Part shown: one piece after another, positions 23,938-62,586 of the stretch
Position numbering within the stretch: position 1 is the stretch's first letter
How the letters are laid out: each line of letters opens with the position of its first letter
Origin: Macrostomum lignano
Lineage: Eukaryota
Assembly (NCBI GenBank): GCA_002269645.1
Contig: NIVC01000200.1
Coordinates: 706,543-770,542 of the forward strand
DNA: 64,000 nt
Direction: 5' to 3'
The notes under the pieces: model-generated
What the model saw: the letters and a program-made list of their open reading frames with translations, nothing else
The model's database searches: none
What the model was told of the DNA's origin: nothing
Translations under genes and position numbers: made by a program

Positions 23938-24050
23938 CAGACAGACAGACAGACAGACACACACACAGACAGACAGACACTAAGACAGACAGACACTAAG
24001 ACAGACAGACAGACACACAGACAGACAGACACTAAGACAGACAGACACTA

Positions 24051-24087
<37 letters not shown>

Positions 24088-24090
24088 CTA

Positions 24091-24159
<69 letters not shown>

Positions 24160-31636: not shown

Positions 31637-31692
<56 letters not shown>

Positions 31693-38792: not shown

Positions 38793-41370
38793 GGCGCTTT
38801 CATATTTCCGAAATTTCATGTCTCCAAAAGCACCTCTTTCATAAATCTGACCCTTCAAATATCCGACAGGCAAAACTCTAAACCTAAACCCGAATGGAGA
38901 TATGAATTGTCGGATATATGAAGTGTCGTAGATATGAAGTGTCGGAGATATGAAGTGTCGTAGATATGAAGTGTCGGAGATATGAAGTGTCGTAGATATG
39001 AAGTGTCGGAGATGTGAAGTGTCGGAGATATGAAGTGTCGGAGATATGGAGTGTCGGAGATATGAAGTGTCGGAGATATGAAGTGTCGGAGATATGGAGT
39101 GTCGGAGATATGAAGTGTCGGAGATATGTAAGTGTCGGAGATGTGAAGTGTCGGAGATGTGAAGTGTCGGAGATGTGAAGTGTCGGTGATGTGAAGTGTC
39201 GGATATGTGAAGTGTCGGAGATGTGAAGTGTCGGAGATATGAAGTGTCGAATATATGAAGTGTCGGAGATGTGAAGTGTCGGATATATGAAGTGTCGGAG
39301 ATGTGAAGTGTCGGAGATTTGAAGTGTCGGGGATGTGAAGTGTCGGGGATATAATGTGTCGGAGATATGAAGTGTCGGAGATGTGAAGTGTCGGAGATAT
39401 GAAGTGTCAGAGATATAGAGTGTCGGGGATATAATGTGTCGGAGATATGAAGTGTCGGAGATGTGAAGTGTCGGAGATATGAAGTGTCGTAGATATGAAG
39501 TGTCGGGGATGTGAAGTGTCGGAGATATGAAGTGTCGGGGATGTGAAGTGTCGGAGATATGAAGTGTCGGAGATATGGAGTGTCGGAGATATGAAGTGTC
39601 GGAGATATGAAGTGTCGGAGATATGTAAGTGTCGGAGATGTGAAGTGTCGGAGATGTGAAGTGTCGTGGATATAATGTGTCGGAGATATGAAGTGTCCGA
39701 GATGTGAAGTGTCGGAGATATGTAAGTGTCGGAGATGTGAAGTGTCGGAGATATGAAGTGTCAGAGATATGGAGTGTCAGAGATATGGAGTGTCGGGGAT
39801 GTGAAGTGTCGGAGATATGAAGTGTCAGAGATGTGAAGTGTCGGGGATGTGAAGTGTCGGAGATGTGAAGTGTCGGGGATATAATGTGTCGGAGATATGA
39901 AGTGTCGGAGATGTGACGTGTCGGAGATGTGAAGTGTCGGACATATGAAGTGTCAGAGATATGGAGTGTCAGAGATATGGAGTGTCGGGGATGTGAAGTG
40001 TCGGAGATATGAAGTGTCGGAGATGTGAAGTGTCGGACATATGAAGTGTCGGAGATATGAAGTGTCGGGGATATAATGTGTCGGAGATATGAAGTGTCGG
40101 AGATGTGACGTGTCGGAGATGTGAAGTGTCGGACATATGAAGTGTCAGAGATATGGAGTGTCAGAGATATGGAGTGTCGGGGATGTGAAGTGTCGGAGAT
40201 ATGAAGTGTCGGAGATGTGAAGTGTCGGGGATGTGAAGTGTCGGAGATATGAAGTGTCGGGGATATAATGTGTCGGAGATATGAAGTGTCGGAGATGTGA
40301 AGTGTCGGACATATGAAGTGTCAGAGATATGAAGTGTCGGAGATGTGAAGTGTCGGACATATGAAGCGTCAGAGATATGAAGTGTCGGATATGTGAAGTG
40401 TCGGAGATGTGAAGTGTCGGAGATATGTAAGTGTCGGAGATGTGAAGTGTCGGAGATATGAAGTGTCGGAGATGTGAAGTGTCGGAGATATGAAGTGTCG
40501 GAGATGTGAAGTGTCGGACATATGAAGTGTCAGAGATATGGAGTGTCGGGGATGTGAAGTGTCGGCCATATGAAGTGTCAGAGATATGGAGTGTCAGAGA
40601 TATGGAGTGTCGGGGATGTGAAGTGTCGGAGATATGAAGTGTCGGAGATTTGAAGTGTCGGGGATGTGAAGTGTCGGAGATATGAAGTGTCGGGGATATA
40701 ATGTGTCGGAGATATGAAGTGTCGGAGATGTGAAGTGTCGGACATATGAAGTGTCAGAGATATGAAGTGTCGGATATGTGAAGTGTCGGAGATGTGAAGT
40801 GTCGGAGATATGTAAGTGTCGGAGATGTGAAGTGTCGGAGATATGAAGTGTCGGAGATATGAAGTGTCGGAGATATGAAGTGTCGGAGAGTGTGAAGTGT
40901 CGGAGATATGAAGTGTCAGAGATATGGAGTGTGTGAAGTGTCGGAGATATGAAGTGTCGGAGATGTGAGAGTGTCGGAGATATGATGTCGGAAGTGTCGG
41001 AGAGATATGAAGTGTCGGAGATATGAAGTGTCGGATATGTGTCGGAGATATGAAGTGTCGGAAGTGTCGAATATGAAGTGTCAGAGATATGAAGTGTCGG
41101 ATATGTGAAGTGTCGGAGATGTGAAGTGTCGGAGATATGAAGTGTCGTAGATATGATGTGTCGGGGATGTGAAGTGTCGGAGATATGAAGTGTCGGGGAT
41201 GTGAAGTGTCGGAGATATGAAGTGTCGGAGATATGGAGTGTCGGAGATATGAAGTGTCGGAGATATGAAGTGTCGGAGATATGGAGTGTCGGAGATGTGA
41301 AGTGTCGGAGATGTGCAGTGTTGGAGATGTGAAGTGTCGGAGATGTGAAGTGTCGGAGATGTGAAGTTGT
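38793..41370 (+). mobile_element. Non-autonomous element with massively expanded 16-bp array (GGAGATATGAAGTGTC)n, ~150 copies; long copy of the 1808-2250 family
   Basis: Left arm TTTCATATTTCCGAAATTT...CCCTTCAAATATCCGAC, then AAACCTAAACCC, then the array in the opposite orientation to the arm subunits. Confidence 0.75.
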
Positions 41371-42242
41371 GCAGCGGCCCTGACTGTCTGATCGTCAGGC
41401 AGTTACACCCTCTGTGCCTTAGGGGCTGGCCATCATGGGTATGAATCGCACCTGGGCCAATTCTCATGCGCACACAAGCCTAAATGAATGTGGCAGCGCA
41501 CGATATTGAACCGGTGGTCGTGACGCGGAGAGTCGGATGCGTTTACCGCTGAGATGCTCAGCCCCTCGGGCCAGTATCCAAGGCAGAAGTATCAGATTGC
41601 ATTCAGGCAGCTCTAAAAGCCCGTAACCCCTTGTCTCCCTGTCTCTGGTGCTTCTATATAGCCAATTCATCTCATTTTTACCGTTACTCGCAGACCAACT
41701 CGAACAAAATCTGCATTTCAGTTTAGCGTGTCTGCCTGTGCGTGCGTGCATTTGTGCTGGCTTCCAGCTCTTCTCCACTGCGGTAGAAAAGTGAGCAGTC
41801 TGCACAGTTTAAAACTTAAAATACAAGACTTCGGCGATAAATGTGCATTAGACGGCTATTCTGCAAGACTGCGAGAGTATGAATGCAATTCGAATGGGGG
41901 GGGGTTTACAAGCGAGTTCGTTCGGGGTGGCTGGCACAGCCCCACCCAAGCAAACTTCGAGCACATAGCGCGCTATGCCGGCTGGAGTGTCTGGCAAACT
42001 CTATTAAACCTCGAGCCTAAACAAGCAACCTGCGTTGTTTGGTCCGTAAGGGCAGAACGGTTTTTTCTCTCCTGCGGCGTTTTCGACCTGCCATTCAGAC
42101 CTTTTTTTCTGTTCTATCCAAAACTAATATATAAGCGTAAGTTTTATGCTCAGATAGTGGCTCAACGCTAAATTCTAGGGACTCATAAGTGTTGTTTGAG
42201 TCGGATTAGTTTAATTATAAAACCGAAACTTCAAACTTCATC

Positions 42243-43307
42243 ATGACTGCCGCTTCCAGTCCGTTGCTGCTGAGGCGATCCTTGTCGCTCGCACCGCAGC
42301 CTCCGCCGCATCATCAGCATTTACACATTCACCAGCGCATTGGTAAGCCGCGACAGCCACAGCGACAGAATAGTAACACTAATAGTAACAGCGGTGGTAG
42401 TACGAACGGCAGTAATATGAGCAGAGAGCAGTTGGCTCAACGGCTGAGACACAACTGGGCTGCAAGAGACACGCAGGTTCAGCAACAGCAACAGCAGCAA
42501 ACTGCGGCAGCTGTGATGGCCGCAGCAGCAGTTAACCACGACGCTCTGTTTTCACCGACAGCTGTTGGCAAGTTGGCAGCTGCCGCGGCCGCCGCCGCGG
42601 TGACTGGAAATGGTGGTGGCAGCGGTGCGACGGACATGGATCTGACTAACCTAGGCTGGCTACAAGTAAGCACTGAGTTTTGATTGGCATGGATTTTTTT
42701 TTTCTGCTAAACGTAAACGTAAGCGCGCTAATATAGCAATGCTAAGCTAACAGTCTGCGTAGAAAGAAGAGTTAGAAAAGATAGGACCCTTTGACAAACA
42801 AGCGTGGAGGGAGAAGCGTTTACTGCTAGAGCTGTTTATTCAAGATAAAGACAGCTTAGATCTTAAAGTACGAATTGATGCTTTAGCCGACGGGGGTGTG
42901 TGGTGCATAATCCTGCAACTAGCGTCTCGTTATCAACCTCGCAGAACATGAACCTGATGAAGCTGACTCCGCCAACTCCGCCAGCTTCGCCGCAGCCTCC
43001 ATCGGCGGCCGCAATGGCGGCAGCGGCTGCAGCAGCGGACGCAGCTGCCGCTGCATCTGCAGCCGCATCGGCGGTGGCGGTGCTTGGCTCCGAGGTGATT
43101 CTAGTCGAGCAAACGGTAGCTGACTCTCTGCAGTTCTATACACAGCAGCAGCATCAGCAGAGCTACCTGTCAGCTTCCGGTAATTCGAGGCCCAACCTCC
43201 ATCGAGCAATCTCTTCGCCAAATTTTCAACCTTCAACAAACGGTGGGTTGCCGTATGCAAATCAGTCGCTATTGACGTCGCAGCATCATCATAGTCAGCA
43301 GCAGCAT

Positions 43308-43342
<35 letters not shown>

Positions 43343-46300
43343 ACATCAACAATCGTTGATTCAACTGCCACCATCGGCGCCTCCAATCCCACCGAAGCCA
43401 GATCCGGAATATGCGGCCGATCCGACCCTCCGACCGCCCTATTCTTTTTCTACTCTAATCTACATGGCGTTGAAAAGTCTGAAGAAATCGAAAATGACTC
43501 TGCAGGAAATCTGCGACTGGATTGGGGCGCATTTTGCATTCTATGGCAGTTCGGCCGATCAAAGCTGGCAGGTGAGGAGTTATAGTCGCAGTGATTAAGT
43601 ACGCGCTAGCAATCAATTAAAAAGGTGCTCTTGCTGCTGAAAATAAGAGAGCATTGTACAGGTATAAAGGTATTAGTTGTGATTCACGTGGTACCTGAGA
43701 TATTTCTGTTTTCTCAGAAATACCATTCGATGTACAAGGAATGTACACCTTTTTACTTTCTATTTTGAAAAATCTGCACTCAATATTGCATGGTATCGCT
43801 TGTAGAAATGTTCAACCTATTTTGACAAACTCAAATGCAATAATGACGAATTTCAACCGAAAATGACAAACCTTTATTAACAATTTGCAAGCAACTTTGA
43901 CAATCGGTTACAAAACAGTGCCTCTGTCTCGCCGTCTATGGAACAAAGCTTGCATATGTGCACCCATTTTTGACAGATTGCATCCAAAAGTGACAGATTG
44001 CATTAGCACACATTGAAAAAAACCTTAGTTAGCCGTATAAAATACACTAGCTAATCAGTTTGCCAAGTCGTATTACGTTCTGTATGGCAGGTCCGCGATT
44101 CAACGCCAAAGTTAGCGACGACGACAGGAGGCGGTTAACCCAGTAATTAACCGGTTAACTACTGCCCATGAGAATGGTGACGACTTTTTTACCTGGCTCG
44201 TGCCTTGGGGATCAAAAGAACCACTGCAGCGTATGCCGTTGGTAGAATTGGACGAGTAGAAAAGCTGCCAAATGGAGATCAGCCGTTCAGATCAGAGTTA
44301 ATCAGGCCATGCTGGCGGTTTCATGAAGAACTCGATTTAGTCAAATCCCAATATTGCTCTGGCCAGGACCTGGGATCAGCGAACACTCGCCGGGGCGATT
44401 GGCCAGGGCAAACTCTCACTGGATCAGCCAGGGCGCGTAGGCCCCGCTAGGGTTGGGATCGGATCTTTAATTGTCACTTTTGGATGCACTCTGTCAAAAA
44501 TGGATGCACATATGCAAGCTTCGTTCCATAGACGGCGAGACAAAGGCACTGTTTTGTAACCGAGTGTCAAAACTGAATGCACACTGTCAAAATTGCTTGC
44601 AAATTGTTAATAAAGATTGAAGTTTGTCATTTTCGGTTGAAATTCGTCATTATTGCATTTGAGTTTGTCAAAATAGGTTGAACATTTCTACAAGCGATAC
44701 CATGCAGACTGTCAAAATTGAATGCAAACATGTCAATATTGAGTGCAGATTTTTCAGAAAAGAAAGTAAAAAGGTGTAGCACGGTGTCTGAGGAATCTGA
44801 TGCGGTGGCTAAGGGATCTGATAGGGATCTGATGCGGTGTCTGAGGGATCTGATAGGGATCTGATGCGGTGTCTGAGGGATCTGATAGGGATCTGATGCG
44901 GTGTCTGAGGGATCTGATAGGGATCTGATGCGGTGTCTGAGGGATCTGATAGGGATCTGATGCGGTGTCTGAGGGATCTGATGCGGTGTCAGAGGGATCT
45001 GATGCGGTGTCAGAGGGATCTGATAGGGATCTGATGCGGTGTCTGAGGGATCTGATGCGGTGTCTGAGGGATCTGATAGGGATCTGATGCGGTGTCTGAA
45101 GGATCTGATGCGGCGGCTAAGGGATCTGATGCGGTGTCTGAGGGATCTGATGCAGTGTCAGAGGGATCTGATGCGGTGTCTGAGGGATCTGATAGGGATC
45201 TGATGCGGTGTCTGAAGGATCTGATGCGGTGTCTGAAGGATCTGATGCGGTGGCTAAGGGATCTGATGCGGTGTCTGAGGGATCTGATGCGGTGTCTGAG
45301 GGATCTGATGCGGTGTCAGAGGGATCTGATAGGGATCTGATGCGGTGTCTGAAGGATCTGATGCGGTGTCTGAAGGATCTGATGCGGCGGCTAAGGAATC
45401 TGATGCGGTGTCTGAAGGATCTGATGCGGTGTCAGAGGGATCTAATGCGGTGTCAGAGGGATCTGATGCGGTGTCTGAGGGATCTGATGCGGTGTCAGAG
45501 GGATCTGATGCGGTGTCAGAGGGATCTAATGCGGTGTCAGAGGGATCTGATGCGGTGTCAGAGGGATCTGTTTGGGCTAGTTTCAGAATTTTTTCTTACA
45601 GACACTGTAGACAGTTGATCGAAAGTGGCAAAATACGGTATTTATTCAATTGGGACCTGTTTTCGAAATGTTCCAACAATTATTCAAAGTAAACACTACA
45701 TTTTATCGTGGTTTGACCAACTCTGATCTGTGGCATACAGCCAGTTAGTTAACGCCCAACCAACTATGAATTTAAGTTAATTGAAGACTCAATTAAGCTT
45801 CGCCGTTTAACTGAATCTTATCTTATCTATTGTGCTGAGCAGTTTTAAGAAGAATAAACCTAAACTTTACTCTTTTATCTAATCTGTCTGTCTGACAGCA
45901 GTGTCTTCTAATCCTCTTGTGAGTAGGAATTTTTTATAGTTAGCCAATTTCATAGAATGACATGCAGAAGTTTTTCGCATCCTGACAATGCACTTTTAGG
46001 GAGACTATATCCTCATATTTTAATACTAGTTGGCTCTATGAAGTCATTATATATTCTCTCTGAAGCAGCAAAATTCTCTTCACAATAGCAGAGAGCTGTG
46101 TTAGTAGGCTGGCCGTAAACTGGACAATGGGTCGTGTACTATATAAAGTTTTTAACCATGGCGAGTACGCCATTGGGGAGCTTTCTTCCCACGGTTGGGA
46201 CGAGATGGGAGCTGAGTGAGACATCGCCTGGAGTAAGAGATGATGAAGAGAACGCGGGAACTGTGCAAACACTGTTGTAGCGCAAAGGAAACTTTGCAGA

Positions 46301-48693
46301 AAAAAATCAAATAGCAATTCTGCTTTTTACTTGATTTATTAACGATTTAAAACTGGCGAAGATGCATCAGTACGTGTTTTATGGCCCATGTACCTGAGGA
46401 AAGATGGGTAGAGCTTTGGAGACATTTTTCAATGCCCATATTTGGAGATGTGTTATCGGGCGCAGGGGCGTCGCCATATGGACTTTATGGTGGGGGGGCA
46501 AAGCCAAGAATTCTACATGTACAGTGTACATGTACATTATTTTCAGAATCAGTGTTATCAGCGCTCATTTGGGCTCCGCAGGCTCTCATTTTGGTGCCAC
46601 AGGCACTGATTTTAGCACCGCAGGCTCTCATTTTGGTGCCACAGGCACTCATTTTGGTGCCACAGGCACTCATTTTGGCGCCGCAGGCTCTCATTTTGGT
46701 GCCACAGGCACTGATTTTAGCGCCGCAGGCACTCATTTTGGCGCCGCAGGCACTCATTTTGGCGCCGCAGGCACTCATTTTGGCGCCGCAGGCACTCATT
46801 TTGGCGCCACAGGCACTCATTTTCTATGGCGCCGCAGGCACTGATTTTGGTGCCACAGGCACTCATTTTCTATGGCGCCGCAGGCACTGATGTTGGTGCC
46901 ACAGGCACTCATTTTCTATGGCGCCGCAGGCACTGATTTTGGTGCCACAGGCACTCATTTTCTATGGCGCCGCAGGCACTGATGTTGGTGCCACAGGCAC
47001 TCATTTTCTATGGCGCCGCAGGCACTGATTTTGGTGCCACAGGCACTCATTTTCTATGGCGCCGCAGGCACTGATTTTGGTGCCACAGGCACTCATTTTC
47101 TATGGCGCCGCAGGCACTCATTTTGGCGCCGCAGGCACTGATTTTGGCGCCGCAGGCACTCCTTTTGGTGCCATATGCCCTCATTTTAGCGCCCCAGGCA
47201 CTCATTTTAGCGCCCCAGGCACTCCTTTTGGCGCCGCAGGCACTCATTTTGGCGCCGCAGGTACTCATTTTGGCGCCGCAGGTACTATATTTTGCCACCC
47301 TGAAGCAAAATTTATTTCCATAACGGGTCACAAAGTTGGGTGGGTGGGGTGGGCAAAGCATTGGCATGTCCCCCATAGTTTTTACTGGGGGGACATGTTC
47401 CCCTTGTCCCCACCCCCGGTGGCGACGCCCCTTATCGGGCAACACAACGCATACTTATCCCAATAACCCAACTTGTTGGCCAGCTAGTAGCTTGTAAAGC
47501 TCGTAGTTACCGACTCTAAAATTATCTCCAACAACCCCCGTCTCTCCCAGAGCGCCGTCCGCTACAACCTGACCCTCAATCGTTGCTTCCAACGCGTACC
47601 TCGACGCAAAGACGAAGCGGCCAGCCGTGGTGGCAGCGGAAGCGCCGGCAGTTGCGGCGGCTACTGGCGCCTGAATCCAGACTACACTGGCCAGTTTGAG
47701 CTGGCTAATGCGCAGCAGCAGCAGTACCAGCATCATCAGGTGTCGCCTTCATCTCACGGATTGTTAAAGCGTCAACGCTCAACGCAGCCTCAGCATCATC
47801 ATCAGCTGCCGCCACCGCCATTGCATCTTTTCGATTCGCCTCTTGTAAACGGCGGCGCCGGTTTCCATGGCACCAACAATCGACGGCATCACAGTCACGA
47901 TGAACAAACTGACGAGTCGCCGTTGCTAAGCGACCACCCGGCGGCGGCAAAGCTGAGGCGAATCCAGGATGAGAGCAGATTTGGCAACGGAAGAAGCGTC
48001 GATGCGGACAGCGGCGGCAGACACGACTCCAGCGGTCACTGGGTGTCCATGGCTCTAAGCGGCGGCCCTGTGGAGACTCGAGTCCGCGACCCGACCCTGA
48101 CGGCTCAGCCGGCTTCAACAGCGGCAGCAGCTGCCGCAGCCTCTGCCGCCGCCGCCGCAGCCACGGCCGTCTCTGTAGCGGCGACAACGGCAGCCGCAGC
48201 GGCGGCCTCCGTCGCGGTTTCCACTCTGACAGCATCGTCAGTTTCACTGACGCCAGGCAAAGACTCTACAGCGGCCACCGCCGTGTCGAACGTTGGCGCC
48301 GACTCTCTCGTAGCTCTACCAGGCGGCATCATCGGCGTCGGAGATCTCGACGAAGACGAGCGCTGGCTGTTTGAACCGGATGACGACGCTGTACTGGCTG
48401 ACCCGACGCCGGCGCTTGACATGTCGAATCCCGACAGCTTGCTGGATTTGACGCTGCACGGCATGGCCCTGCCGCCGCCCAGCTGGTGGCTCACCAACGG
48501 GTCCAACCACGGTGGCATGGGTGATCAGCATCAGCAGCATCAGAATCCTGCCAGTTTGAATGGCTCTTTGAACGGCCTCATGATCGGCCTGCCGAGCACT
48601 CCGTCCCCCATTATGCAGCACGAGCAGGACGAATGGATCGACGAGAATTTTGTCGGGGCTGTTGGTTCGCTTGACAACTTGCTGGGTATTTAA
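42243..48693 (+). CDS. FoxJ1: FoxJ1-like forkhead transcription factor, 3 exons (42243-42665, 42945-43571, 47551-48693), 730 aa
   Basis: All phase-0 GT-AG joins. N-terminal DLTNLGWLQ|NMNLM motif. Forkhead domain PEYAADPTLRPPYSFSTLIYMALKSLKKSKMTLQEICDWI...SWQ|SAVRYNLTLNRCFQRVPRRKDE...GGYWRLNPDY. The SWQ, VPRxKDE and GG(F/Y)WR..PxY features match FoxJ1 better than FoxN2/3. Poly-Q and poly-A tracts. Confidence 0.85.
43746..44776. mobile_element. Long-TIR MITE / foldback element with TA target duplication, in FoxJ1-like intron 2
   Basis: 43746-~44000 is the reverse complement of ~44468-44776; the right arm carries two small internal duplications. TA flanks at 43744-45 and 44777-78. Confidence 0.8.
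44783..45570. repeat. 21-bp minisatellite (GTGTCTGAGGGATCTGATGCG)n interleaved with an 11-bp subunit (AGGGATCTGAT)
   Basis: Directly visible. Confidence 0.94.
46462..47432. mobile_element. hAT-like MITE carrying an internal 21/23-bp minisatellite (GGCGCCGCAGGCACTCATTTT)n at ~46560-47290
   Basis: TIRs AGGGGCGTCGCCA / TGGCGACGCCCCT. Flanking direct repeat (T)TATCGGGC at 46453-46461 and 47432-47440. Confidence 0.75.
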
Positions 48694-51600
48694 TGGGATT
48701 ATTGGGATCTATTTTGGATTTGAAAGCAAGTTTTTAAACTAAATGAATTCTTGCTCGCTAACAAGTGTTTTTTACCATAGACATTAACAATTTGCACGCT
48801 CCAGGGTGATGATTCTGCCAGAGACGAATTTAATCGCAGTTTTCAACATTCGATGTCTATGGCCCAAAGTGCAGGTTGCTATTTATAGAACTAAGTAGAA
48901 TAGAATTAGATTGCAGTTTTGGCAAACTATAATACTTAGCAAAAAGTGTAAAACAAAATGTTGCATGTATTTTACATTAACTTTACTAAAAAAGTCGTTA
49001 TAGCCTTGACAGTGAAATGTGTATAATTAGTAAAACTTCCTCCGCCCTTCATTGATTTTTTTGTTGTATTTTGTTTTAATTTTTGAGTCTTCCTCTTACG
49101 CTTTGCTTTCTTGGATTTTCTGTTTTCCTATGAATCGTCTGTTTTGCAGATTTTCTAAGCCCATATAGCTTGTGTTGGTGCCTTTTGATGACTGAAACTT
49201 GATGTTCTTTCTCTGTTGTTTTCTGGTTTCTTTTATCAGTAAAACACTTAATGCTGTACTGCTCCTTTTGTTGTAGAAGAACAGTAGTATATACAAGTAG
49301 TATGTAGTAGCTATAGCTATTAGCATTGTTTAGTAGATCTTTACTCGATTTAACATCGCTGTGTTGCCTTATCTATTTTGTTTTTAAACTTTTATCTTTT
49401 ACCTCGGAGTGCCTCAGATTTAACATCTTCTCCTCAGTTTCCTACTCTTATGAGTAGGCTAGTATTGTACATTTACTCTATTAATTAAAATGTGATAAAA
49501 CAGTCGAAGTCTATACTCAACGCTCCGTCCATTTTCAAGCGCTTATATAGTTTTTTCTTCTTTTTTTCTAATTTACTGTTTGTGCATGTGATGCAATTAA
49601 TAATATCATTGTTTAAATATTTTGAATAATATTTAATAGCTTTTAAACGTACTATTGCGTAATATTATATTTGATCTGATATTACAATTTAAACAAATTT
49701 CAAATCCGTCCAATTTTTGTCTGCAATCGATAAAATTTTAAGTCTGAATGTATAAACGCTTAACGCTACACTCGATGTGCTGTCCATTTTCAAGCGCTTG
49801 TATAACGCTTTTCTTTTAATTTTGTTTTCTGTCTGTGATGCAAAGAATTATACTGTTTATTTAAATACTTCCCACTGATGTTTAAATATTATTGTTTTAA
49901 TTCGTATTGGTAAAATGTTGCTAATATATACAAAAATTTTATTTTTACATTCTATTCAATTTCCGTCCGTGATCAGAGTAAAATATGTACGATAATGTAA
50001 ATGCCATCAAAATAGATATTTTTTCAGAGATAGTTCTCCAGCAGTTTCAATTGGTTTTAGAGAGCTTTAGAATTATCCTAAACGAATTTTCTCTCCTGGA
50101 GAGAGTTTATAGTTTTTTGTGAATGCGAATCAGATGAAAATTCTGATTAGATTTATGATATGGCAATATTATGCATCTTTTGTTCTATATGTTTGCAACA
50201 AAAAGCGAAGCTGAAATTTTTGTTTTAATTATTTGAGCTTTCTCAAACAATTTTAATTTCAAATACTCCTTGTTTTTATAGCTGTGTATAAAAATGGTAG
50301 ATAGACATTTTTTGTTTTTCTAATATGAGCGTGTCTATCCAATCTATTGTTAACTTTCTCCAGATTCACCCGCCCACCCCGCAGTCAGAATAATGAATGC
50401 GAAAATCAGACGCAAAATTAATAATGAAAGTCATTGAATGACTTTGATAGTTTTGTAATTGAATTACTATGCTTTTGAAAAAATAATCTGTTTTAATCAT
50501 TGATTTTTATGCATATATTAATTTTAACGTCAAAGGTTAATGAAAGTTAAAGGACGTACGTGTGCGAGGGAGGAAAACCGAGGGGTAGATTCAAGGACTT
50601 GGTGAGAGCGAAAGAAGTGCAATACTTTTCATGACCCATTACCCTTTGATTTGAGTTGGCACCAATTCATTTGAGAGTAGAGAGGCACCAGCACCGGGGG
50701 CTTTAGCAGGACCAAGGGGCGCCAGCATAAAGGGGCCGCGGCCTCCCTTGCCCAAGACCTCTAAACTATAGACTTGTATGCTTATATAGTCGTACGAACT
50801 CACCCAGCTCAGCAACCAGGTAAAACTGTTAATACTCGTAAGAATAAAGAAAAAGCCGACTGTGTGCAAGCTGCAGGAGCAGAACATGGTAGACTTCTAG
50901 ATGAGGTTAATCAACTCAAGATGCATATGCTAGCTATCCAGAAGCAATTCTCGAGACTGCAAGCAAGTCAACCCCCCCCCCCCCCAAAATATGCATTTGA
51001 TATGCAGTTACAATCAAAAAGTTTTGATCGGGTAAATCTCTTTTTTTAAGACTTACATATTTACTAAGCATTGGGGAGGCAATGCAGACAAAATCTGCCG
51101 CGTGGCGAGTGTATAGCTAGTCTATTGCAGCGGGGAATAACTCACGGCAGATTCTCTACTAGCGAAACGTACTGCAGGGTACGTGGGACAGACAAGGGGT
51201 CAACTAATTAAGTTATTTTAATTTATTACTCTCGAAAGTACATGTAAGAGTATTTTCTGGCATGGTGGGGTTTTAGCAATAAGAGTGCTTGCTTATACTA
51301 CTAGCATTATAAGATCCTACTGACTAAGAAGTATCAAATTATTGCACTTGAAAATGCCTAGAAAGAATTACATCGTTCTTGGAAATCTGTTTGAGATAAG
51401 AAACCGCGCACTTGTCAAGACTACGGAAGAATTTCTACAGAATTCCCCTAATCCTGAAGCGCTCGGTTGAAATCTCTGCTATCTCATCTGCATCATCGCA
51501 AATGCATGCGCGTCGATGCCTCCACCACGCGGCGTCCCCTGTCGATCTGGATACGGACGACTTGACGTTGAATCATCCCAGTGAGGAAGTGATTCAACCG

Positions 51601-52396
51601 GCGTGAAAATGGATTTTGTCGAACTAAAGCCACTCTGATGTCATGCTTCAGCCAGGTGTCGGTGACAACGAATCCATGCTGTCACTCGCGTCTGCGACAG
51701 TCACTCCTTGGCCAACTCCAGCGAGCACCCAGTTGACAAATCTCATTCAAGTCGAGGCCAGTCAGCTAGTGGACGCTGTACTGTTCGTACCGCTTGACAA
51801 CCTCCGGAATCGAGGCGCTACTCATTTTGCCACTACGATCGCTTCCACATCTGACTAAACATGCATGGGGGCGTTGGCCTGCGCCGATCTGCTGCCGTGT
51901 AACGGGCTGGGAATTTGACTCCGTCGGCTTAGTACTGATACTGCTGTTCGACTTGACGCAGTACTTTCTGCTGAGCTCTTGGTGTAGTGCGGCTTCGGAG
52001 CCCTGTTCGTCGCAATGTTTGCCTATCTGGCTGATACAAGTCGCAATTAAGACCGCGATACTGCAATGAGGGCTTCGTTGAGGTTACCTTCGGCTTAGCT
52101 GGTGTTGTTATCGAGCTGATACTGATTTAGTTGACAAACGTACGGCGCCGGTGATGAAAGCGAATCTCGAACAAGACTCTGCTTCTGCCCTACAGCAACA
52201 TCGCTGGCCTGTTTCATAGCAATACTCGTCTGTCCTTAACACTGGCTCTACATACTATTTGCCTCATTTTGGCATCTACAGCGCAAGCCTCATTGGCTCG
52301 TCAGTATAGTTAACAGTCTACCAAATGAACTAACCGTTCTGTCTGGATTCCGTGTTCATTGAATTGGCTACTTGTTGGAAGCGAGCTCAAGTAGCT

Positions 52397-53352
52397 CCCT
52401 GTCTCTTGGTCGGCGTCCCTGTCTCTTGGTCGGCCCGGCCCTGTCCCTGGTCGGCGCGGCCCTGACTCTTGGTCGGCGCGGCCCTGTCCCTGGTCGGCGC
52501 GGCCCTGACTCTTGGTCGGCGCGGCCCCGTCCCTGGTCGGCGCGGCCCTGACTCTTGGTCGGCGCGGCCCTGTCCCTGGTCGGCGCGGCCCTGACTCTTG
52601 GTCGGCGCGGCCCCGTCCCTGGTCGGCGCGGCCCTGACTCTTGGTCGGCGTGGCCCTGTCCCTGGTCGGCGCGGTCCTGTCCCTGGTCGGCGCGACCCTG
52701 TCCCTGGTCGGCGCGGCCCTGACTCTTGGTCGGCGCGGCCCCGTCCCTGGTCGGCGCGGCCCTGACACTTGATCGGCGCGGCCCTGACACTTGGTCGGCG
52801 CGGCCCTGACACTTGGTCGGCGCGGCCCTGACACTTGGTCGGCGCGGTCCTGTCCCTGGTCGGCGCGGTCCTGTCCCTGGTCGGCGCGGTCCTGTCCCTG
52901 GTCGGCACAATCCTGTCCCTGGTCGGCACAATCCTGTCCCTGGTCGGCACAATCCTGTCCCTGGTCGGCACAATCCTGTCCCTGGTCGGCACAATCCTGT
53001 CCCTGGTCGGCACAATCCTGTCCCTGGTCGGCGCGGCCCTGACTCTTTGTCGGTAACCCCTGTGTCCTGGTCGGCAACCCCTGTGTCCTGGTCGGCAACC
53101 CCTGTGTCCTGGTCGGCAACCCCTGTGTCCTGGTCGGCAACCCCTGTGTCCTGGTCGGCAACCCCTGTCTCCTGGTCGGCAACCTCTGTCTCCTGGTCGG
53201 CAATCCCTGTCTCCTGGTCGGCAACCCCTGTCTCCTGGTCGGCAACCTCTGTCTCCTGGTCGGCAATCCCTGTCTCCTGGTCGGCAACCTCTGTCTCCTG
53301 GTCGGCAATCCCTGTGTCCTGGTCGGCGCGGCCCTGACTCTTGGTCGGCGCC
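52397..53352. repeat. GC-rich 21-bp minisatellite with successive variant blocks (core GTCCCTGGTCGGCGCGGCCCT), ~45 copies
   Basis: Directly visible; at least four variant domains share TGGTCGGC. Confidence 0.94.
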
Positions 53353-54024
53353 CCTACCCCCCCCCTCTTTGAGCCGGTGAATGTCATGTCCAACAGTCAT
53401 ATGCAATAGGTTGAGCTTCCTTTATTCTTCGAGCTTACGAGTACATGTACATGATGGTTTTTAGGTTTTGGGTCAAAATTCCACAAAAAACTTTTTAGGC
53501 ACAATTTCGTGAAAATCGTGCACTCGCGAAGACCGACTAATCTCTCGCTGAAATATGTTTTAGCATTAGTGTATGATATTTTTTCCGAGTTTGTTTCCTA
53601 AATTTGTCTACAAGCAGTATGCTACATTGCAGTAGTGTTTTCTTCTAAACAGTTGAATTTTTGCAACGATTTTTTTGGCATTATATTTCAATGAATTTCG
53701 TCATAGATCAATACGGGCAAAGAAAATCCGTCTACAGACGTTCTTTGGTTATAGCAGCTGTTTGCTTAAGTTCGTATTGTTTTTGCTGCTAAACGACAGC
53801 AACGATCGTTCCGTTTTATTTTGTTATACGTGCACATGGACGACTAAGCCATACTGCACTATAGTAGCAGAGTGTTGCAATATTTGCAGAGACGTGTACA
53901 TGTATGCTCAAAAAAGATGGTGCAGTAAATACCGTAGTACTTGAAAGTATACCACAAACTAGCACGCAAAAAAATTTTTCCAAGAAATCTCACTCGTATT
54001 TTTTTTCGCTTTCGGAAGTCTGCT

Positions 54025-54462
54025 TCCGTTTTTCGGGGGTTTGCTTTCGGCTTTCGGGGGTTTGCTTTCGGCTTTCGGGGGTTTGCTTCCGGCTTTCGGG
54101 GGTTAATTTGCTTTCGGCTTTCGGGGGTTTGCTTTCGGCTTTCGGTGGTTTGCTTTCGGCTTTCGGTGGTTTGCCTTCGGCTTTCGGTGGTTTGCCTTCG
54201 GCTTTCGGGGGTTTGCTTTCGGCTTTCGGTGGTTTGCCTTCGGCTTTCGGTGGTTTGCTTTCGGCTTTCGGTGGTTTGCCTTCGGCCTTCGGTGGTTTGC
54301 CTTTGGCTTTCGGGGGTTTGCTTTCGGCTTTCGGTGGTTTGCTTTCGGCTTTCGCGGTGGTTTGCTTTCGGCTTTCGGTGGTTTTTTTGCCTTCGGCTTT
54401 TGGGGGTTTGCTTTCGGCTTTCGGGGTTTTGCTTTCGGCTTTCGGTGGTTTGCTTTTGGCTT
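54025..54462. repeat. 20/21-bp minisatellite (TTTGCTTTCGGCTTTCGGTGG)n, ~21 copies
   Basis: Directly visible. Confidence 0.92.
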
Positions 54463-55016
54463 TCGAGCGCTTGCTTGTTATTATCGGGTCTTTCGGGAAC
54501 CTGCGCTTAATCAAGTCATCAGCGCTAGTAGCCACTGATATGCAGCAAACAGTCAGCCCGACGACAAGCAGAAACAGTGCTATCCTGATATACACTTAAT
54601 TTGCTAATTTAGGCTTGAAACAGACAAATAGAAACCTGAGAATCTCGAAGGTATACGGCCGTAGATCAGCTGCAAACGGTTGTGAGTTACGAAGTTGTGA
54701 AATGGAACCGAGCTATTTAGTTGATATAGTTCTGAAATAGTCCATTGCGCAGAGCTGCCACGTGGAAGTTAGGGAAAAACGTAACTTTAATGCAAATTTC
54801 TTGCAATCCTAGGTGATTCTCTGCCTTCGAGCAAAAGAAATGTATGAAAAAATAGCAGAAAAAATGAAAGTAGGGTATTCTGTAAATTTTTCAAACAGCA
54901 TTAACTCAGCATACATTTTCGTGGCTAAAATTTTTAAAATATTGAATTCGAAGTTTAGGGATTTCGACTTGGCAGTTCCATACAATGTTATAAATAAAAA
55001 TAAATTGTCTCTCTAC

Positions 55017-58365: not shown

Positions 58366-61300
58366 TAGGGGTAGGACGTGATCACGATCGTGATCACGAT
58401 ATCGTGAATTCACGACCTTTTTCAGTGTCGTGAATTCACGAGTCGTGAAACATTTTTCACGTGCGTGATCGTGATTGTGGGTTTCTTTCAGCTTCAGATG
58501 TTACTATGTTTATACTTTTCAGTTCCCCAAACCACAATCGTGTACAGTCCTAAATGTAGACTTACTTGGTTTTTGTTTTTCTTTTCAAATACAACGAATG
58601 TGTTTTAACACAAAACTTACAGAATAGAGTTTTCAGTTTACTTTACTTAGTTCAGAAAGTTCGAAGTTAAAGTGGATTTTCGAAGTTCAAAGCTTACTGC
58701 CTTATTCTTTTCAATCTTTTGTTTATTTTGTAAAATGTAAAATTAAAACTGAAAAGCACTGAATGAAAATATAAATTGTATATATGTATGACTGTATATA
58801 AATTTCACTACATGATACGATGATAGTACATGACATGTACAGACAAGTGTTTGTTAACTTGCTTAGCTGCCTACAGAACTGAAAACAGTGAAAAGTGAAA
58901 AACAGAAAAGCTTATCAGTGTATGAATATGAAGTATAAAAGAGTACATGTAGGTTTACTACTTTACTTTTACGTTCTACACATATAGTGTTATTACAATG
59001 ACTAATTTAAGTCTAATCTATACTATACTAGCTACATGCAAAAAATCATACTACAGAGTCTACAGACTACAGAGTACACAGCTACACACTATAGCAACAG
59101 TTATCTATTCCTTATCGATAAACTTTTTCTTGTAGCTCCAACTCTACTTGTTCTATAGTCTTTGATTATTTATTTTCTCTATCATTATCTTGTCTCTCTG
59201 ATCTCAATCTTCAAAAAAGTAAAACTAATCACTAATCAGCAATAACAGCAATGAATTGAATGGACCCTGCTCATTTCTCTATGGGTCAAACTTCCGAACA
59301 TTATAGTTAATAAAAACAAGCTTTTCAACGGTTTCGCCAAGCAGGCGACGTCGTTTCGGCTCGTAGATGTTTCCAACGTTGCTGAAGATACGCTCACTTG
59401 GAACACTGGTAGGTGGTGGTCCCAGAAATTTCCGAACAAGTGCTGACATTGCAGTTGATGGAGTCTTGTCTCTCCAGAACTTCATTGGGTCTTCCTCAAA
59501 TGGAAGTCGAGGCTCTGATAGGTAGGCTGCCATTTCACGAGCCAACTTGTCCATAGCATTGCCTCTGTTTGAAACTGGCAGTAGCGTTCCGGCCCTAGAC
59601 AGGTCACGCAGAGTTGCAGCTGCAGCACTAGAAGTAGAAGACTTCTCGAACAGGGCTGACATAGATAGCTGCTGAGGCTGAGACTCAGTTTGTCTAAAAA
59701 GGTGAAATTAAAAGTTAAAAGTTAAAACAAAGAGAACTTTGATATATTAGTTATAAAATTTATAACTTACAGATGTAGCAAATGTAATTTATAATTTAAT
59801 TTTTTTGTTACATGTACATGTACATTGAATTATGAAATAGAGGAAATACTCACGGCTCAGTTTCGATAGATACATCGGAGAGGTCCTCGTCTATGGCTGT
59901 ATCGCCATCAACAGTAGGAAGAGAAGTTTCACGCAAAATTTCATTCATTGCTTTTACGAGCTCAGCCTTAGCAAAGTTGCGCTGCTCTTCATCGAAAAAA
60001 TCTAGCCGGAAGCGTGGGTCTAACATCGTAGCAACAATGTGGTGGTGACTCTTTTTTTCGTCAGAGAAGCGTTGAGTCAACCCTTTCACCAGGTCGTCTC
60101 GAAGGTACGTGATGCCAAAGCAGTCTACCTGCTGCAGATGCTCCAGCGACACTTTCACCATCGGCAAGATACACGAGATGCTGGCAGTTTCCCTGCTGAC
60201 TTCTAGCGTAAAAACCTCAAAAATCTCAAGAAGTTTGACAGCTTTCTTTGAAACATCTGACTCATTGTCCGTCAGGATTTCAATTGGTCGGTGTCTGGTG
60301 CGATAGACACTAAACGCTTCCTCTTGCTCGTTGATTCGGCGTAACATGGCTAGTGTTGAATTCCAGCGTGTGTCTACATCTTGCACGAGGCTGTGTGTTG
60401 GTAGCTTCAGCTGGAGCTGCAGTGTTTTGAGGTTTGCTTGAGCGGTTACAGAGTGGTGGAAGTGGCCAACAATGCTCCGTGCTTTGTCAAGTATTGTCTT
60501 CAGTCCTCGATGACCGGAGATGGAATCCTTAACAACAAGGTTCAGCTTGTGGGCAGCACAATGGGCAGATGGTACTTTCAGAAGTTCTCCTGCAAGCTTC
60601 ATGTTGCTGGCCCCATCACGCAGGAGGAGGCTGACTTGCTCTAAGCCAATGCCCCACTCACCAAGGGTTGTCGAAAAAACGGCCGAGATGTTAAGCCCAG
60701 TATGGGCATCAGTGAATGGCTTTACGCACAGTAAAAGCTGCTTACGCTCAAAATCTGGCGTGATAGAATGGATTGTGAAGGACATGAGTGCCAACTGGCC
60801 GTCACTCCACAAGTCACACGTGAAACCGAAATCTCGCAGTCTGTCTATTTCGTCCTGGACCTGCAATTTAATTTCTTCATAGAGAGTCTCTAGCTTGTCA
60901 TGATAAAATCGAGTGCTCTTCAATCGATATTGCGGACATGCTTCTTTCAACAGATCGCGAAAGCCTTCACCTTCTACCACAGAGAATGGCTGTGAATCCA
61001 ACACAATAAAGCGGAGAATTTTTCGATCAATTGCAACCGAACGAGGGTGCGAATCCGACCATTCTTGAGCATTTGCTTGAGCAAACATTGTGCTCAACTT
61101 CTGCTGCTTCAATGGTTGTGGTCCATCTTTACATTTTGGCTTTGCACGATCTGCCTCAGTGTTTAGGAGCTCTTTGAATTGAATTGGATGGCAGGATTCT
61201 ATGTGTCTTCGCATGCTGCCTGTTGATCCTGTGTTTCGTAGAACCTCCTTCTTACAAGCTAGGCAAGCAGCAGAATTCTCTTTTCCTTCAACGTCTTTAA

Positions 61301-62586
61301 AGTACAACCACACAGCACTGCCTCTTCCTCGAGGTTGCTGGGTTGGCTTATCAACAGAGGCCATTGCAAATGAATGGCTGAAATTGTTTGATTTGTAAAT
61401 TGTAAATTGTAATGTAATATTGTGTAATTGCCTATTTTAATTTGCTAGGTAGAAAAGCAAAGAAAAAACAAGTATTATATTATTTTAAATTAAAATATTT
61501 ATTTATATTTTAAATAAAATATTGCATAGTATAGCAGTATAGTGTAAATGTAAAGTCACTACAGACTTTAAAGTCAAATAGGCTAGAAAAAAATATTTTT
61601 AGACTAACCATATAGATTAGAAATATACTACTATGCATCAGGCAATCAGGCATACATATTCAATATACCAGTGTACCACATGATAGTACTAGTACATAAT
61701 AGTTAATACTATATTGAATATTGAATATTATTCATTATTCAATTCAATTCAAGAAGAAAAAGTATTTAATATTTGTGTTTGACTATTATTATTACTATTA
61801 ACAAATGACAATAACAATAGCAAATAACAATTTAATTTAGCATATCCATCAAGTATATTTGCTACTTAGTACTTAGACTTAGTCAACCTTAATTTTTAAT
61901 TTACAGCAATTTATTTTAGTAAAAAATACTATGCTTATATATTAAAAATTATTAGTTATAAATTATAATTACTAAATAACTATTAGACAATCAGATTATA
62001 AAATTATGCTCTAGTATCTACTATCTATCTGTATAGTATCTAATCTATTTATACATTATTATAGCATAAAAATAATAAGAAGAAAGAAAAACTCAAATAT
62101 GCAAATTCATGATCAAAATGAAATGAAATTTTTGTTTTAACTATTTATTTAATACTAAATTCTAAAATAGTAATAGTAGCAAATACTACTTTTAAATTAA
62201 AAATTTAAAAATAAAAATACTAAATAGTTACAGCTTTCAGCTTAGTTTGAGCTTTGAGAAAGCCAAAAAGCAACACAAATGTCTAAGAAGTAAGAACTTC
62301 TTACTTCTCAGCCAGACTCTGAGTTCCTTCTCAACCAGAGAAGAAAGCCAGATGGGCAGATGCAGATGGTATAAGCTGATGGTATAGAAGCACTTAAAAA
62401 TAGAATCAAACACATTAACTGATAGAAAAATTCAAATTTGAAGAAAAAAAAACAAAATTTGAACGGAAATTTTTTACTTTTAATTTTTCACGAACCAATC
62501 ACGATCACGATCACGATCACGGCAAAGCTGAAATTATTCACGACTACTCACGCCCGACCCAAAAATTTTTGCTCGTCCGACCTCTA
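58366..62586 (-). mobile_element. Full-length hAT (Ac/ZBED-like) DNA transposon, 4221 bp
   Basis: Perfect 8-bp TSD CTATTTGC (58358-58365; 62587-62594). Imperfect TIRs TAGGGGTAGGACGTG / reverse complement TAGAGGTCGGACGAG. TCACGA/TCGTGA subterminal repeats at both ends. Transposase inside. Confidence 0.95.
59279..61364 (-). CDS. hAT transposase with BED zinc finger, 2 exons (61364-59854, 59693-59279), 641 aa
   Basis: BED finger SAVWLYF...CLAC...H..SCH. Catalytic FTCDLWS and LLRDGASNM, CAAH motif, TRWNST, and the C-terminal dimerisation domain with SVPSERIFS. A phase-2 intron (GTGAGT...TTTTTAG) joins the two ORFs with no stops. Confidence 0.93.

What the first reader, a model, noticed from the sequence alone, without database searches (positions are those of the whole stretch)
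47551..47580. FoxJ1-like factor with a rewired DNA-recognition helix (WQ-SAVRYNLTLN instead of [12 protein letters not shown])
Seen: exon 2 ends TGG CAG and exon 3 begins AGC GCC GTC CGC TAC AAC CTG ACC CTC AAT. I found no alternative exon with the canonical sequence in intron 2. Established: the Asn, His and Ser of N-x-x-R-H-x-x-S in helix 3 make the base-specific contacts to RYAAAYA and are near-invariant in forkhead proteins. Here all three change (N to S, H to Y, S to T) while the rest of the domain and the 730-aa ORF stay intact. Inference: new sequence specificity, or a non-DNA-binding/dominant-negative FoxJ1 paralog. Flatworms are known to have multiple FoxJ1 paralogs.
Basis: partly seen in the sequence, partly recalled or inferred. 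Interest (0 to 1): 0.75.

Follow-up and report, generated by a model that had tools for sequence, protein, structure and literature searches.

The report
Flatworm FoxJ1 paralog with non-canonical DNA-reading helix
This is a real, intact Macrostomum lignano gene from an old flatworm-wide branch of the cilia regulator FoxJ1, and its DNA-reading helix has lost the three residues that nearly all forkhead proteins use to read their target motif, so it probably no longer recognises DNA the usual way.

Summary
A three-exon, 730-aa gene on the + strand (42243-42665, 42945-43571, 47551-48693) encodes a confident forkhead domain. Its recognition helix, the first ten codons of exon 3, reads SAVRYNLTLN instead of NS[IV]RHNLSLN. 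No canonical alternative exists in any frame of the window.

The window is Macrostomum lignano. A second genomic copy carries the same helix and identical splice sites, and its GenBank gene model comes from an RNA-seq-based annotation.

This is not a private oddity. The gene most likely belongs to a FoxJ1 sub-lineage found across rhabditophoran flatworms: Schmidtea FoxJ1-5, Echinococcus FoxJ1-2, and unnamed trematode, cestode and monogenean proteins.
- The His is replaced in every member and the Asn and Ser in nearly all (one monogenean keeps both), each by varied residues.
- The helix Arg, the hydrophobic core and the strand-2/wing-1 stretch FQRVPRRK[ED]E stay nearly invariant.
- The domain is about twice as conserved as the rest of the protein.
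- Every neodermatan group sampled, and the planarian, also keeps a canonical FoxJ1. None was seen for Macrostomum.

Best reading: a maintained paralog that has lost the canonical RYAAAYA readout. Changed or relaxed DNA binding is likelier than none, but this is untested. Two flatworm Fox surveys do not mention the helix change.

The parts
42243..42665 (+). Exon 1 (residues 1-141), from the ATG to the donor CAA|GTAAGC. It ends with the FoxJ1 N-terminal motif LTNLGWLQ (42642-42665).
   Evidence: The same motif sits at an exon end in S. mekongi clade B (LTNLNWLQ|gtaagt). The equivalent motif ends an exon in S. haematobium canonical FoxJ1 (LTSLTWLY|gtaaga).
42945..43571 (+). Exon 2 (residues 142-350): a low-complexity Ala/Gln-rich region followed by the first half of the forkhead domain (H1, H2; 43431-43571). 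It ends ...SWQ|GTGAGG.
   Evidence: Pfam match.
43572..47550 (+). Intron 2 (3979 bp, phase 0), largely made of minisatellite arrays. It contains no alternative helix-3 exon.
   Evidence: Tandem repeats; six-frame scans.
47551..47580 (+). Recognition helix H3, SAVRYNLTLN (residues 351-360). Ser351 replaces the canonical Asn, Arg354 is kept, Tyr355 replaces His, and Thr358 replaces Ser.
   Evidence: The model places a helix at domain residues 56-67.
47581..47697 (+). Strand 2, wing 1 and strand 3: RCFQRVPRRKDE, then a Macrostomum-specific Gly/Ser insert (47617-47661), then GGYWRLNPDY. FQRVPRRK.E is nearly invariant across the clade.
   Evidence: The insert has low pLDDT.
47551..48693 (+). Exon 3 (residues 351-730 plus the TAA stop). 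It includes the C-terminal motifs LLDLTLHG...SWW (48439-48489) and EWIDENF...LDNLLGI (48631-48690), which are shared with flatworm relatives.

Best explanation
This is the M. lignano member of an old FoxJ1 sub-lineage of rhabditophoran flatworms, the group that contains Schmidtea FoxJ1-5 and Echinococcus FoxJ1-2. The gene is intact. A sister copy with identical exon boundaries has a gene model from a transcriptome-based annotation.

The forkhead domain still folds as a normal winged helix and is under purifying selection. However, the helix-3 side chains that read the RYAAAYA motif in canonical forkhead proteins have been replaced: the Asn that makes a bidentate contact to adenine, the His that contacts thymine O4, and the Ser.

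Across the clade those positions drift, apart from one monogenean that keeps the Asn and Ser. The helix Arg, the hydrophobic face of the helix and the basic strand-2/wing-1 stretch FQRVPRRK[ED]E are held fixed.

The most likely mechanism is inferred, not shown. The protein no longer recognises the forkhead motif by the canonical contacts. It still associates with DNA through the retained Arg, the backbone contacts and the basic wing, with a changed or relaxed lineage-specific preference. It would act beside other factors in ciliated cell types rather than as a standard FoxJ1.
For: Gene and identity
- Gene model and helix sequence.
- Forkhead domain at E=1.5e-26.
- Organism and a second copy with the same helix: P0001 and P0190 (PAA62899.1). 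Splice sites are identical in L002.
- The GenBank annotation of that assembly is built from a genome-guided RNA-seq transcriptome (PMC5730564).

Clade
- An exhaustive profile search separates a top group from canonical FoxJ1 proteins. Its members are trematode, cestode, monogenean and planarian proteins.
- Their helices are DIIRQNLTFS, DVIRQHLTLN, ETLRQNLTSS, GALRQDLVAS, EALRQNLVSS, LALRQTLMRS, ASFRQNLALS, NAMRLCLSHN and TGIKNHLTLS.
- Intron positions are shared with S. mekongi clade B and with canonical S. haematobium FoxJ1.
- Neighbour-joining groups the window protein with neodermatan clade B at 64% bootstrap, or 59% with the helix-3 columns removed.

Constraint pattern
- Column entropy, clade B against canonical FoxJ1: Asn position 2.82 vs 0.26 bits (third most variable of 85 columns), His 1.51 vs 0, Ser 1.99 vs 0, Arg 0.39 vs 0. 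FQRVPRRK.E is near 0.
- In trematode and cestode pairs, domain identity is 0.71-0.79 against 0.33-0.47 for the rest of the protein.

Fold
- pLDDT 86. TM-scores normalised to the target are 0.80-0.88 against FOXC2, FOXN1 and FOXA DNA complexes.

Established knowledge
- Helix 3 supplies all base-specific contacts through the N(S/A)IRH motif (PMC6468292).
- These residues are strictly conserved even between forkhead proteins with different specificities (PMC7062188).
Against: - No binding data exist for any member of the clade.
- The bootstrap support that places the Macrostomum gene in the clade is only moderate, and long-branch attraction is possible.
- Variation at the contact positions fits complete loss of base reading as well as it fits lineage-specific new preferences.
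- Tyr could partly replace His, through van der Waals contact with thymine methyl groups. Some residual canonical binding is therefore not excluded.
- The comparison of the two M. lignano copies says nothing about selection on the helix. The whole stretch around exon 3, non-coding flanks included, is nearly identical between them.
Confidence: 0.55

Rival explanations
1. The forkhead domain no longer binds DNA in any useful way. The protein acts as a cofactor, decoy or dominant-negative that competes for FoxJ1 partners through the conserved N- and C-terminal FoxJ1 motifs and the conserved wing surface.
For: - The Asn position is nearly the most variable column of the domain in the clade, and the His is never kept.
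- In schistosomes the helix-1 N-terminal stretch equivalent to PPYSY, whose Ser and Tyr contact DNA phosphates in FOXC2 (PMC6468292), is also degraded (KPMLNAH).
- Replacing exactly the Asn and His (N208A/H212R) is the construct labelled DBD mutant for FoxO1 (PMC8970673).
- The FoxJ1 motifs LTNLxWLQ, DLT..G..WW and LD.LLG are retained.
Against: - The helix Arg is almost invariant.
- The strand-2/wing-1 stretch is more basic and more conserved than in canonical FoxJ1 (RVPRRK). That is what continued DNA-backbone contact would predict.
- The Macrostomum protein keeps RPPYSFS at helix 1.
- No canonical FoxJ1 partner was found for Macrostomum.
Confidence: 0.27
2. Canonical forkhead-motif binding is essentially retained. 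Ser, Tyr and Thr are tolerated substitutes, and the gene is simply a fast-evolving but ordinary FoxJ1.
For: - The fold, the Arg and the wing are intact.
- Ser to Thr is conservative.
- Some teleost FoxJ1-like paralogs also carry Tyr or other residues at the His position (NSIRYNLSFN; names).
Against: - The Asn makes a bidentate contact to the invariant adenine and the His bonds to thymine O4 (PMC7062188). Both are lost together here.
- All 23 canonical FoxJ1 domains compared keep Arg, His and Ser, and 22 of 23 keep Asn.
- Canonical FoxJ1 copies of the same neodermatan groups are almost identical to one another across the domain, in contrast to clade B.
Confidence: 0.12
3. The finding is an artefact: a wrong splice junction, a pseudogene, or an assembly error.
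For: - There is no direct RNA evidence for this exact window copy.
- The M. lignano assembly is redundant, and the two copies form a mosaic of identical and 2-3% diverged patches.
Against: - The ORF is intact at 730 aa with consensus splice sites.
- The sister copy has the same junction, and its GenBank model comes from a transcriptome-based annotation.
- The same intron position and a non-canonical helix occur in orthologues of more than 10 genera.
- No alternative exon exists.
Confidence: 0.03

Closest known systems
Schmidtea mediterranea FoxJ1-5 (DAD52845.1 / BK013017) and Echinococcus multilocularis FoxJ1-2, with the unnamed trematode, cestode and monogenean orthologues
   Same: - N-terminal DDSLTNL(N/G)WLQ motif at the end of exon 1.
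- The (E/D)IC.WI and FQ(R/K)VPRR(K/R) signatures.
- C-terminal DLT..G..WW and LD.LLG motifs.
- A non-canonical helix 3 with the His always lost.
- Smed-foxJ1-5 is reported in epidermal, neuronal and protonephridial cells (PMC7859237).
   Different: - The contact residues themselves differ: S/Y/T here, T/N/T with Arg changed to Lys in Smed J1-5, and D/E/G/L with Q or K in most Neodermata.
- Macrostomum has a unique Gly/Ser insertion in wing 1 and long Ala/Gln tracts.
- Tree support for the grouping is moderate (64%, or 59% without helix 3).
Canonical FoxJ1: vertebrate FOXJ1, Smed-foxJ1-4, and flatworm 'clade A' such as S. haematobium P0080
   Same: - Forkhead fold.
- N-terminal LT(S/N)LxWL motif.
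- Identical intron positions.
- A KDE...GG(F/Y)W type wing.
   Different: - Canonical FoxJ1 has NS[IV]RHNLSLN. Arg, His and Ser are kept in 23 of 23 domains compared and Asn in 22 of 23.
- Smed-foxJ1-4 is required for motile cilia and activates ciliary genes in zebrafish (PMC3493443).
- No such function is known for this gene.
Engineered FoxO1 'DBD' mutant N208A/H212R
   Same: The same two helix-3 positions (Asn and His) are replaced, and the rest of the protein is kept (PMC8970673).
   Different: It is a laboratory construct in another Fox family. Here the change is natural, ancient and accompanied by tighter conservation of the wing.
FOXN1 and FOXN3, the forkhead proteins that read the alternative FHL motif GACGC
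   Same: They are forkhead proteins with non-standard DNA specificity.
   Different: They reach the new specificity with the contact residues unchanged, through an Asn rotamer and a shift in DNA register (PMC7062188). Here the contact residues themselves are replaced.

Membership tests
Forkhead (Fox) superfamily | Profile match to the forkhead domain | tested here: met
   PF00250 at E=1.5e-26, 92.8 bits against a cut-off of 27, profile positions 2-87 of 88. phmmer against PDB gives FOXL2, FOXN3 and FOXC2 at about 1e-16.
Forkhead (Fox) superfamily | Winged-helix fold: three helices, a beta-sheet and wing 1 | tested here: met
   AlphaFold2 model with pLDDT 86 and pTM 0.78. Foldseek best matches are FOXC2, FOXN1 and FOXA DNA complexes, with TM-scores normalised to the target of 0.80-0.88. 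This is a prediction, not a solved structure.
Forkhead (Fox) superfamily | Helix-3 base-contact motif N-(S/A)-(I/V)-R-H-x-L-S | tested here: not met
   The sequence reads S-A-V-R-Y-N-L-T. Only the Arg is kept. PMC6468292 and PMC7062188 describe these residues as the conserved source of base-specific contacts.
FoxJ1 family | Closest canonical relatives are FoxJ1 proteins | tested here: met
   After the flatworm clade, the next hits of the exhaustive search that were looked up are a nemertean and a sea-urchin protein named FoxJ1 by NCBI.
FoxJ1 family | N-terminal LT(S/N)LxWL(Q) motif | tested here: met
   LTNLGWLQ at residues 134-141. The motif is present in most FoxJ1 hits.
FoxJ1 family | FoxJ1-type strand 2 and wing 1 ([19 protein letters not shown]) | tested here: inconclusive
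   The window has RCFQRVPRRKDE, then a 10-residue insert, then GGYW. It is recognisably the same stretch but altered.
FoxJ1 family | Gene structure: introns after the WL(Q/Y) motif and between W-Q and helix 3 | tested here: met
   Both positions are the same in the canonical S. haematobium FoxJ1 locus L003 and in the S. mekongi clade B locus L001.
FoxJ1 family | Activates the motile-cilia gene programme | not testable with these tools
   This needs RNAi, misexpression or ChIP. Only Smed-foxJ1-4 has been shown to do this in flatworms (PMC3493443).
Flatworm FoxJ1 'clade B' (Smed-FoxJ1-5 / Emul-FoxJ1-2 group) | Shared derived signatures: His of helix 3 lost, FQ(R/K)VPRR(K/R), IC.WI, long protein with the C-terminal LD.LLG motif | tested here: met
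   Alignments; profile score gap.
Flatworm FoxJ1 'clade B' (Smed-FoxJ1-5 / Emul-FoxJ1-2 group) | Monophyly with the window protein in a tree | tested here: inconclusive
   Neighbour-joining on 97 domain columns gives 64% bootstrap with Neodermata clade B, or 59% without helix 3. Smed J1-5 and J1-2 join at only 51% and not at all without helix 3. No maximum-likelihood analysis was possible.

The most novel reading that the evidence does not exclude
Macrostomum may have no canonical FoxJ1 at all. In that case this rewired factor and its close paralog would be the only FoxJ1-family proteins of a heavily ciliated animal. Either the cis-regulatory code of the motile-cilia regulon has been rewritten in this lineage, or FoxJ1 works there without base-specific reading by helix 3, perhaps through the conserved basic wing.

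Points in favour:
- No canonical FoxJ1 from Macrostomum appeared among the proteins I could identify.
- The 44-gene M. lignano Fox set of Pascual-Carreras et al. contains no FoxJ1.
- Both FoxJ1 genes found in M. cliftonense match Saccoglossus FoxJ1 more weakly than that species' FoxG and FoxJ2/3 genes do.
- Catenulids are reported to lack FoxJ1 altogether.

This is not proven, because I could not search a Macrostomum genome.
Probability: 0.15. Interest if true: 0.85.

Novelty: new variant of a known kind. Interest (0 to 1): 0.55.

Why it matters
Forkhead proteins are a textbook case of a fixed DNA-reading surface. Even members with different specificities keep the same contact residues (PMC7062188). 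This clade has discarded the helix-3 His throughout, and the Asn and Ser in nearly every member. It has still been kept across all major rhabditophoran lineages, with the domain under constraint and new invariance in the wing.

It is therefore a natural experiment on what a forkhead domain can do without its canonical readout.

There is also a practical consequence. Motif-by-homology pipelines already assign a standard Fox motif to Smed-foxJ1-5 (bioRxiv 10.1101/2022.02.03.479047), which this helix makes doubtful.

The finding also bears on how flatworms control ciliogenesis, including medically important trematodes and cestodes that carry both FoxJ1 types. M. lignano has established transgenesis and RNAi, so the question can be tested directly.

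Tried and rejected
- Two of the three homologous-protein searches returned nothing: the two-sequence alignment A1 and the 127-aa domain alone. This happened even though P0001 contains the identical stretch. I treat it as a tool limitation, not as evidence. Close Macrostomum relatives (M. cliftonense, M. hystrix) therefore could not be retrieved.
- Look-ups of P0001 and of the exon-3 ORF found no contig.
- I hoped to obtain dN/dS from the second M. lignano copy (L002). There are 14 synonymous and 14 non-synonymous codon differences. All but one lie at residues 33-269, the other is T458N, and none is in the forkhead domain.
- That comparison is uninformative about the helix. Divergence between the copies is mosaic: zero substitutions in 743 bp of 5' flank, in the 3' end of intron 2 and in 1 kb of 3' flank, against 2-3% elsewhere. 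The near-identity of exon 3 reflects recent conversion or haplotype structure, not selection, so I rejected it as evidence.
- An alternative or mutually exclusive exon encoding NSIRH was rejected. There is none in any frame of the window, L002 or L001.
- The first Biopython bootstrap run timed out and was replaced by my own neighbour-joining code.
It was rerun without them.
- A search for the locus tag in the literature found nothing.
Full report
**1. The observation**

Exon 2 ends AGC TGG CAG at 43571 and is followed by GTGAGG. After the acceptor tctcccAG, exon 3 begins at 47551 with AGC GCC GTC CGC TAC AAC CTG ACC CTC AAT, which encodes SAVRYNLTLN, and continues RCFQRVPRRKDE.

With exon 1 (42243-42665, donor GTAAGC) and the exon 2 acceptor at 42945, the three exons give a 2193-nt reading frame of 730 aa with phase-0 introns. 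The spliced domain matches Pfam Forkhead at E=1.5e-26.

A six-frame scan of the whole window finds no other coding stretch resembling helix 3. Intron 2 is mostly minisatellite arrays.

**2. Organism, second copy and transcript support**

The closest protein is A0A1I8GW87 of Macrostomum lignano (98% identity, same helix). Its 90% cluster also holds PAA62899.1 (BOX15_Mlig028538g1, 727 aa) on contig NIVC01001891.1, which I fetched as L002.

All six splice-site contexts are identical between the window and L002, and the forkhead domain has no differences.

The GenBank annotation of that assembly was generated from a genome-guided RNA-seq transcriptome (PMC5730564). The WQ|SAVRY junction therefore has indirect transcript support in the sister copy, though I could not inspect reads.

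The comparison of the two copies does not measure selection on the helix. Divergence is mosaic, and the non-coding DNA on both sides of exon 3 is as identical as the exon itself.

**3. It is a clade, not a one-off**

Schistosoma proteins recovered in the first search share several features with the window protein: the N-terminal DDSLTNLNWLQ, RCFQRVPRRK, and the C-terminal DLT...WW and LD.ILGL motifs. Their helix 3 is also non-canonical (WQDIIRQNLTFS).

In the S. mekongi locus the exon boundaries fall at the same places (LTNLNWLQ|gt, FLWQ|gt, ag|DIIRQ).

An exhaustive profile search of 1.84 billion representatives gave a top group clearly ahead of the canonical FoxJ1 proteins. The members were identified:
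- Trematodes: Schistosoma spp., Trichobilharzia, Paragonimus, Calicophoron, Opisthorchis and Clonorchis.
- Cestodes: Mesocestoides and Taenia. Echinococcus FoxJ1-2 comes from a paper supplement.
- Monogeneans: Protopolystoma and Cichlidogyrus.
- The planarian Schmidtea mediterranea FoxJ1-5.

At the canonical N-x-x-R-H-x-x-S positions they read as follows:

| Lineage | Residues at N..RH..S |
|---|---|
| Macrostomum | S..RY..T |
| Smed J1-5 | T..KN..T |
| Protopolystoma | A..RQ..A |
| Cichlidogyrus | N..RL..S |
| Cestodes | L..RQ..M |
| Schistosomes | D..R(Q/K)..T |
| Paragonimus | E..RQ..T |
| Calicophoron | G..RQ..V |
| Opisthorchis | E..RQ..V |

Other free-living flatworm FoxJ1 proteins also deviate: Geocentrophora (HSVRQSLS, SSIRHVLS) and Smed FoxJ1-2 (NSVRNLLS).

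The trematodes, cestodes, a monogenean and the planarian also carry a second FoxJ1 with a canonical helix and an almost invariant domain ([27 protein letters not shown]). This group includes Smed-foxJ1-4, the paralog required for cilia.

A canonical Schistosoma haematobium gene has introns at the same two positions. Exon 3 of the window gene is therefore the homologue of the canonical helix-3 exon.

**4. Where constraint lies**

I compared 13 clade members with 23 canonical FoxJ1 domains.

| Position | Clade B entropy (bits) | Canonical FoxJ1 entropy (bits) |
|---|---|---|
| Asn | 2.82 (third most variable of 85 columns) | 0.26 |
| His | 1.51 | 0 |
| Ser | 1.99 | 0 |
| Arg | 0.39 | 0 |

The helix's hydrophobic positions stay constrained. 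The strand-2/wing-1 stretch FQRVPRRK.E is nearly invariant, and it is tighter than in canonical FoxJ1 at two columns.

The domain as a whole is under purifying selection. In trematode and cestode pairs it is 71-79% identical, against 33-47% for the rest of the protein.

An AlphaFold2 model of the Macrostomum domain is confident (pLDDT 86) except in the wing-1 insert. Its best structural matches are FOXC2, FOXN1 and FOXA DNA complexes.

**5. Placement**

A neighbour-joining tree of 97 domain columns groups the window protein with the neodermatan members at 64% bootstrap, or 59% when the ten helix-3 columns are removed. The canonical neodermatan group has 98-99% support.

Support for including Smed J1-5 is weak. 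The assignment rests on the tree together with the shared signatures, and it is moderate rather than strong.

It agrees with the published inference of one FoxJ1 duplication in the rhabditophoran ancestor and of long FoxJ1 branches in flatworms (bioRxiv 10.1101/2025.01.09.632129).

**6. Mechanism**

Established knowledge:
- Helix 3 provides all base-specific contacts through N(S/A)IRH (PMC6468292).
- The Asn makes a bidentate bond to an invariant adenine, the His bonds thymine O4 and the Arg reads the last base pair.
- These residues are strictly conserved even between forkhead proteins with different specificity (PMC7062188).
- N208A plus H212R is the FoxO1 construct labelled DBD mutant (PMC8970673).

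Inference: the canonical RYAAAYA readout is lost in this protein.

The Arg is kept, the wing is more basic and more conserved, and the Macrostomum protein keeps the helix-1 backbone-contact stretch. I therefore favour continued DNA association with changed or relaxed specificity (0.55) over a non-binding cofactor or decoy role (0.27). Retained canonical binding (0.12) and artefact (0.03) are less likely.

The variation of the contact residues between lineages argues against one conserved new specificity for the whole clade. The recurrent R-Q in Neodermata could still mark a lineage-specific specificity.

**7. Novelty**

The gene family and the orthologues are known and named: Smed-foxJ1-5 in PMC7859237, and FoxJ1 paralogs of Macrostomum in the 2025 preprint.
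- The M. lignano gene itself is absent from the 44-gene set compiled by Pascual-Carreras et al., which reported FoxJ1 as missing in macrostomorphs.
- Neither survey mentions the recognition helix. Text searches for 'helix', 'recognition helix' and 'helix 3' returned zero hits.
- A regulatory-network study assigned a standard Fox motif to foxJ1-5 by homology.

I therefore rate this a new variant of a known kind. It is of moderate interest and directly testable in M. lignano.

Whether Macrostomum has any canonical FoxJ1 is open. If it has none, the finding would be considerably more interesting.

Noticed in passing
window 39000-41367; 44823-45570; 46564-47294; also 5471-6816, 12694-14010, 26239-26763, 30989-32518, 52310-53406, 53904-54599: The window is rich in long minisatellite arrays, for example a 16-bp unit repeated about 148 times just upstream of the gene and 21/42/46-bp units inside intron 2. 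These arrays produce many spurious long ORFs on both strands.
   Followed up: partly
window 8211-9512 (-): A single-exon ORF of 433 aa with F-box-like (PF12937, E=3e-9) and F-box-only C-terminal (PF19270, E=6e-8) domains. It is probably an F-box protein gene.
   Followed up: partly
window 59850-61364 (-): An intact 504-aa ORF with a BED zinc finger (E=1e-8) and a weak match to the Hermes transposase DNA-binding domain. It is a hAT-type transposase or a domesticated ZBED-like gene.
   Followed up: partly
window 24048-24668 (-) and 745-1329 (+): Probable exons of other genes: a HEAT-repeat segment (weak, below the Pfam cut-off) and a weak match to the amiloride-sensitive sodium channel family (E=4.5e-4, below the cut-off).
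   Followed up: no
window 41500-51600 against L002 (NIVC01001891.1): The two M. lignano copies form a mosaic. Some blocks have zero substitutions (5' flank, 3' end of intron 2, exon 3, first kb of 3' flank). They alternate with blocks at 2-3% divergence (exon 1, intron 1, exon 2, distal 3' flank). This suggests gene conversion or recombination between homeologues or haplotypes.
   Followed up: partly
P0017, P0021, P0022 (P0017 is from Schistocerca piceifrons); P0025, P0026 (ENA, unnamed): These proteins of up to 1758 aa have 4 to 8 matched forkhead stretches in tandem, many with degenerate recognition helices (for example ALSVNLSRS and SVHCKLFFS). One also has C2H2 zinc-finger-like sequence at its C terminus (by eye). 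This is an unusual architecture for the family.
   Followed up: no
P0085, P0096 (P0085 is from Parambassis ranga); P0042, P0045, P0101, P0102, P0120 (P0045 and P0101 are from Gouania willdenowi): Teleost FoxJ1-like paralogs with helix-3 substitutions: NSIRYNLSFN, NSIRCNLSFN, KAIRWNLSTK, NSIRHTLTFN, NSIRRTLTLN and NSIRQTLSLN. FoxJ1 duplicates with eroded contact residues are therefore not confined to flatworms.
   Followed up: no
P0002, P0003 (Macrobrachium): NCBI names these proteins 'forkhead box protein A2-B-like' and 'J2-like', but their forkhead domain is FoxJ1-type ([35 protein letters not shown]). The automatic names look wrong.
   Followed up: no
tool behaviour: the search for homologous proteins returned almost no candidates for domain-only queries, although a database protein (P0001) contains the identical 127-aa stretch. 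A 'no hit' from that tool for short queries should not be read as absence.
   Followed up: no
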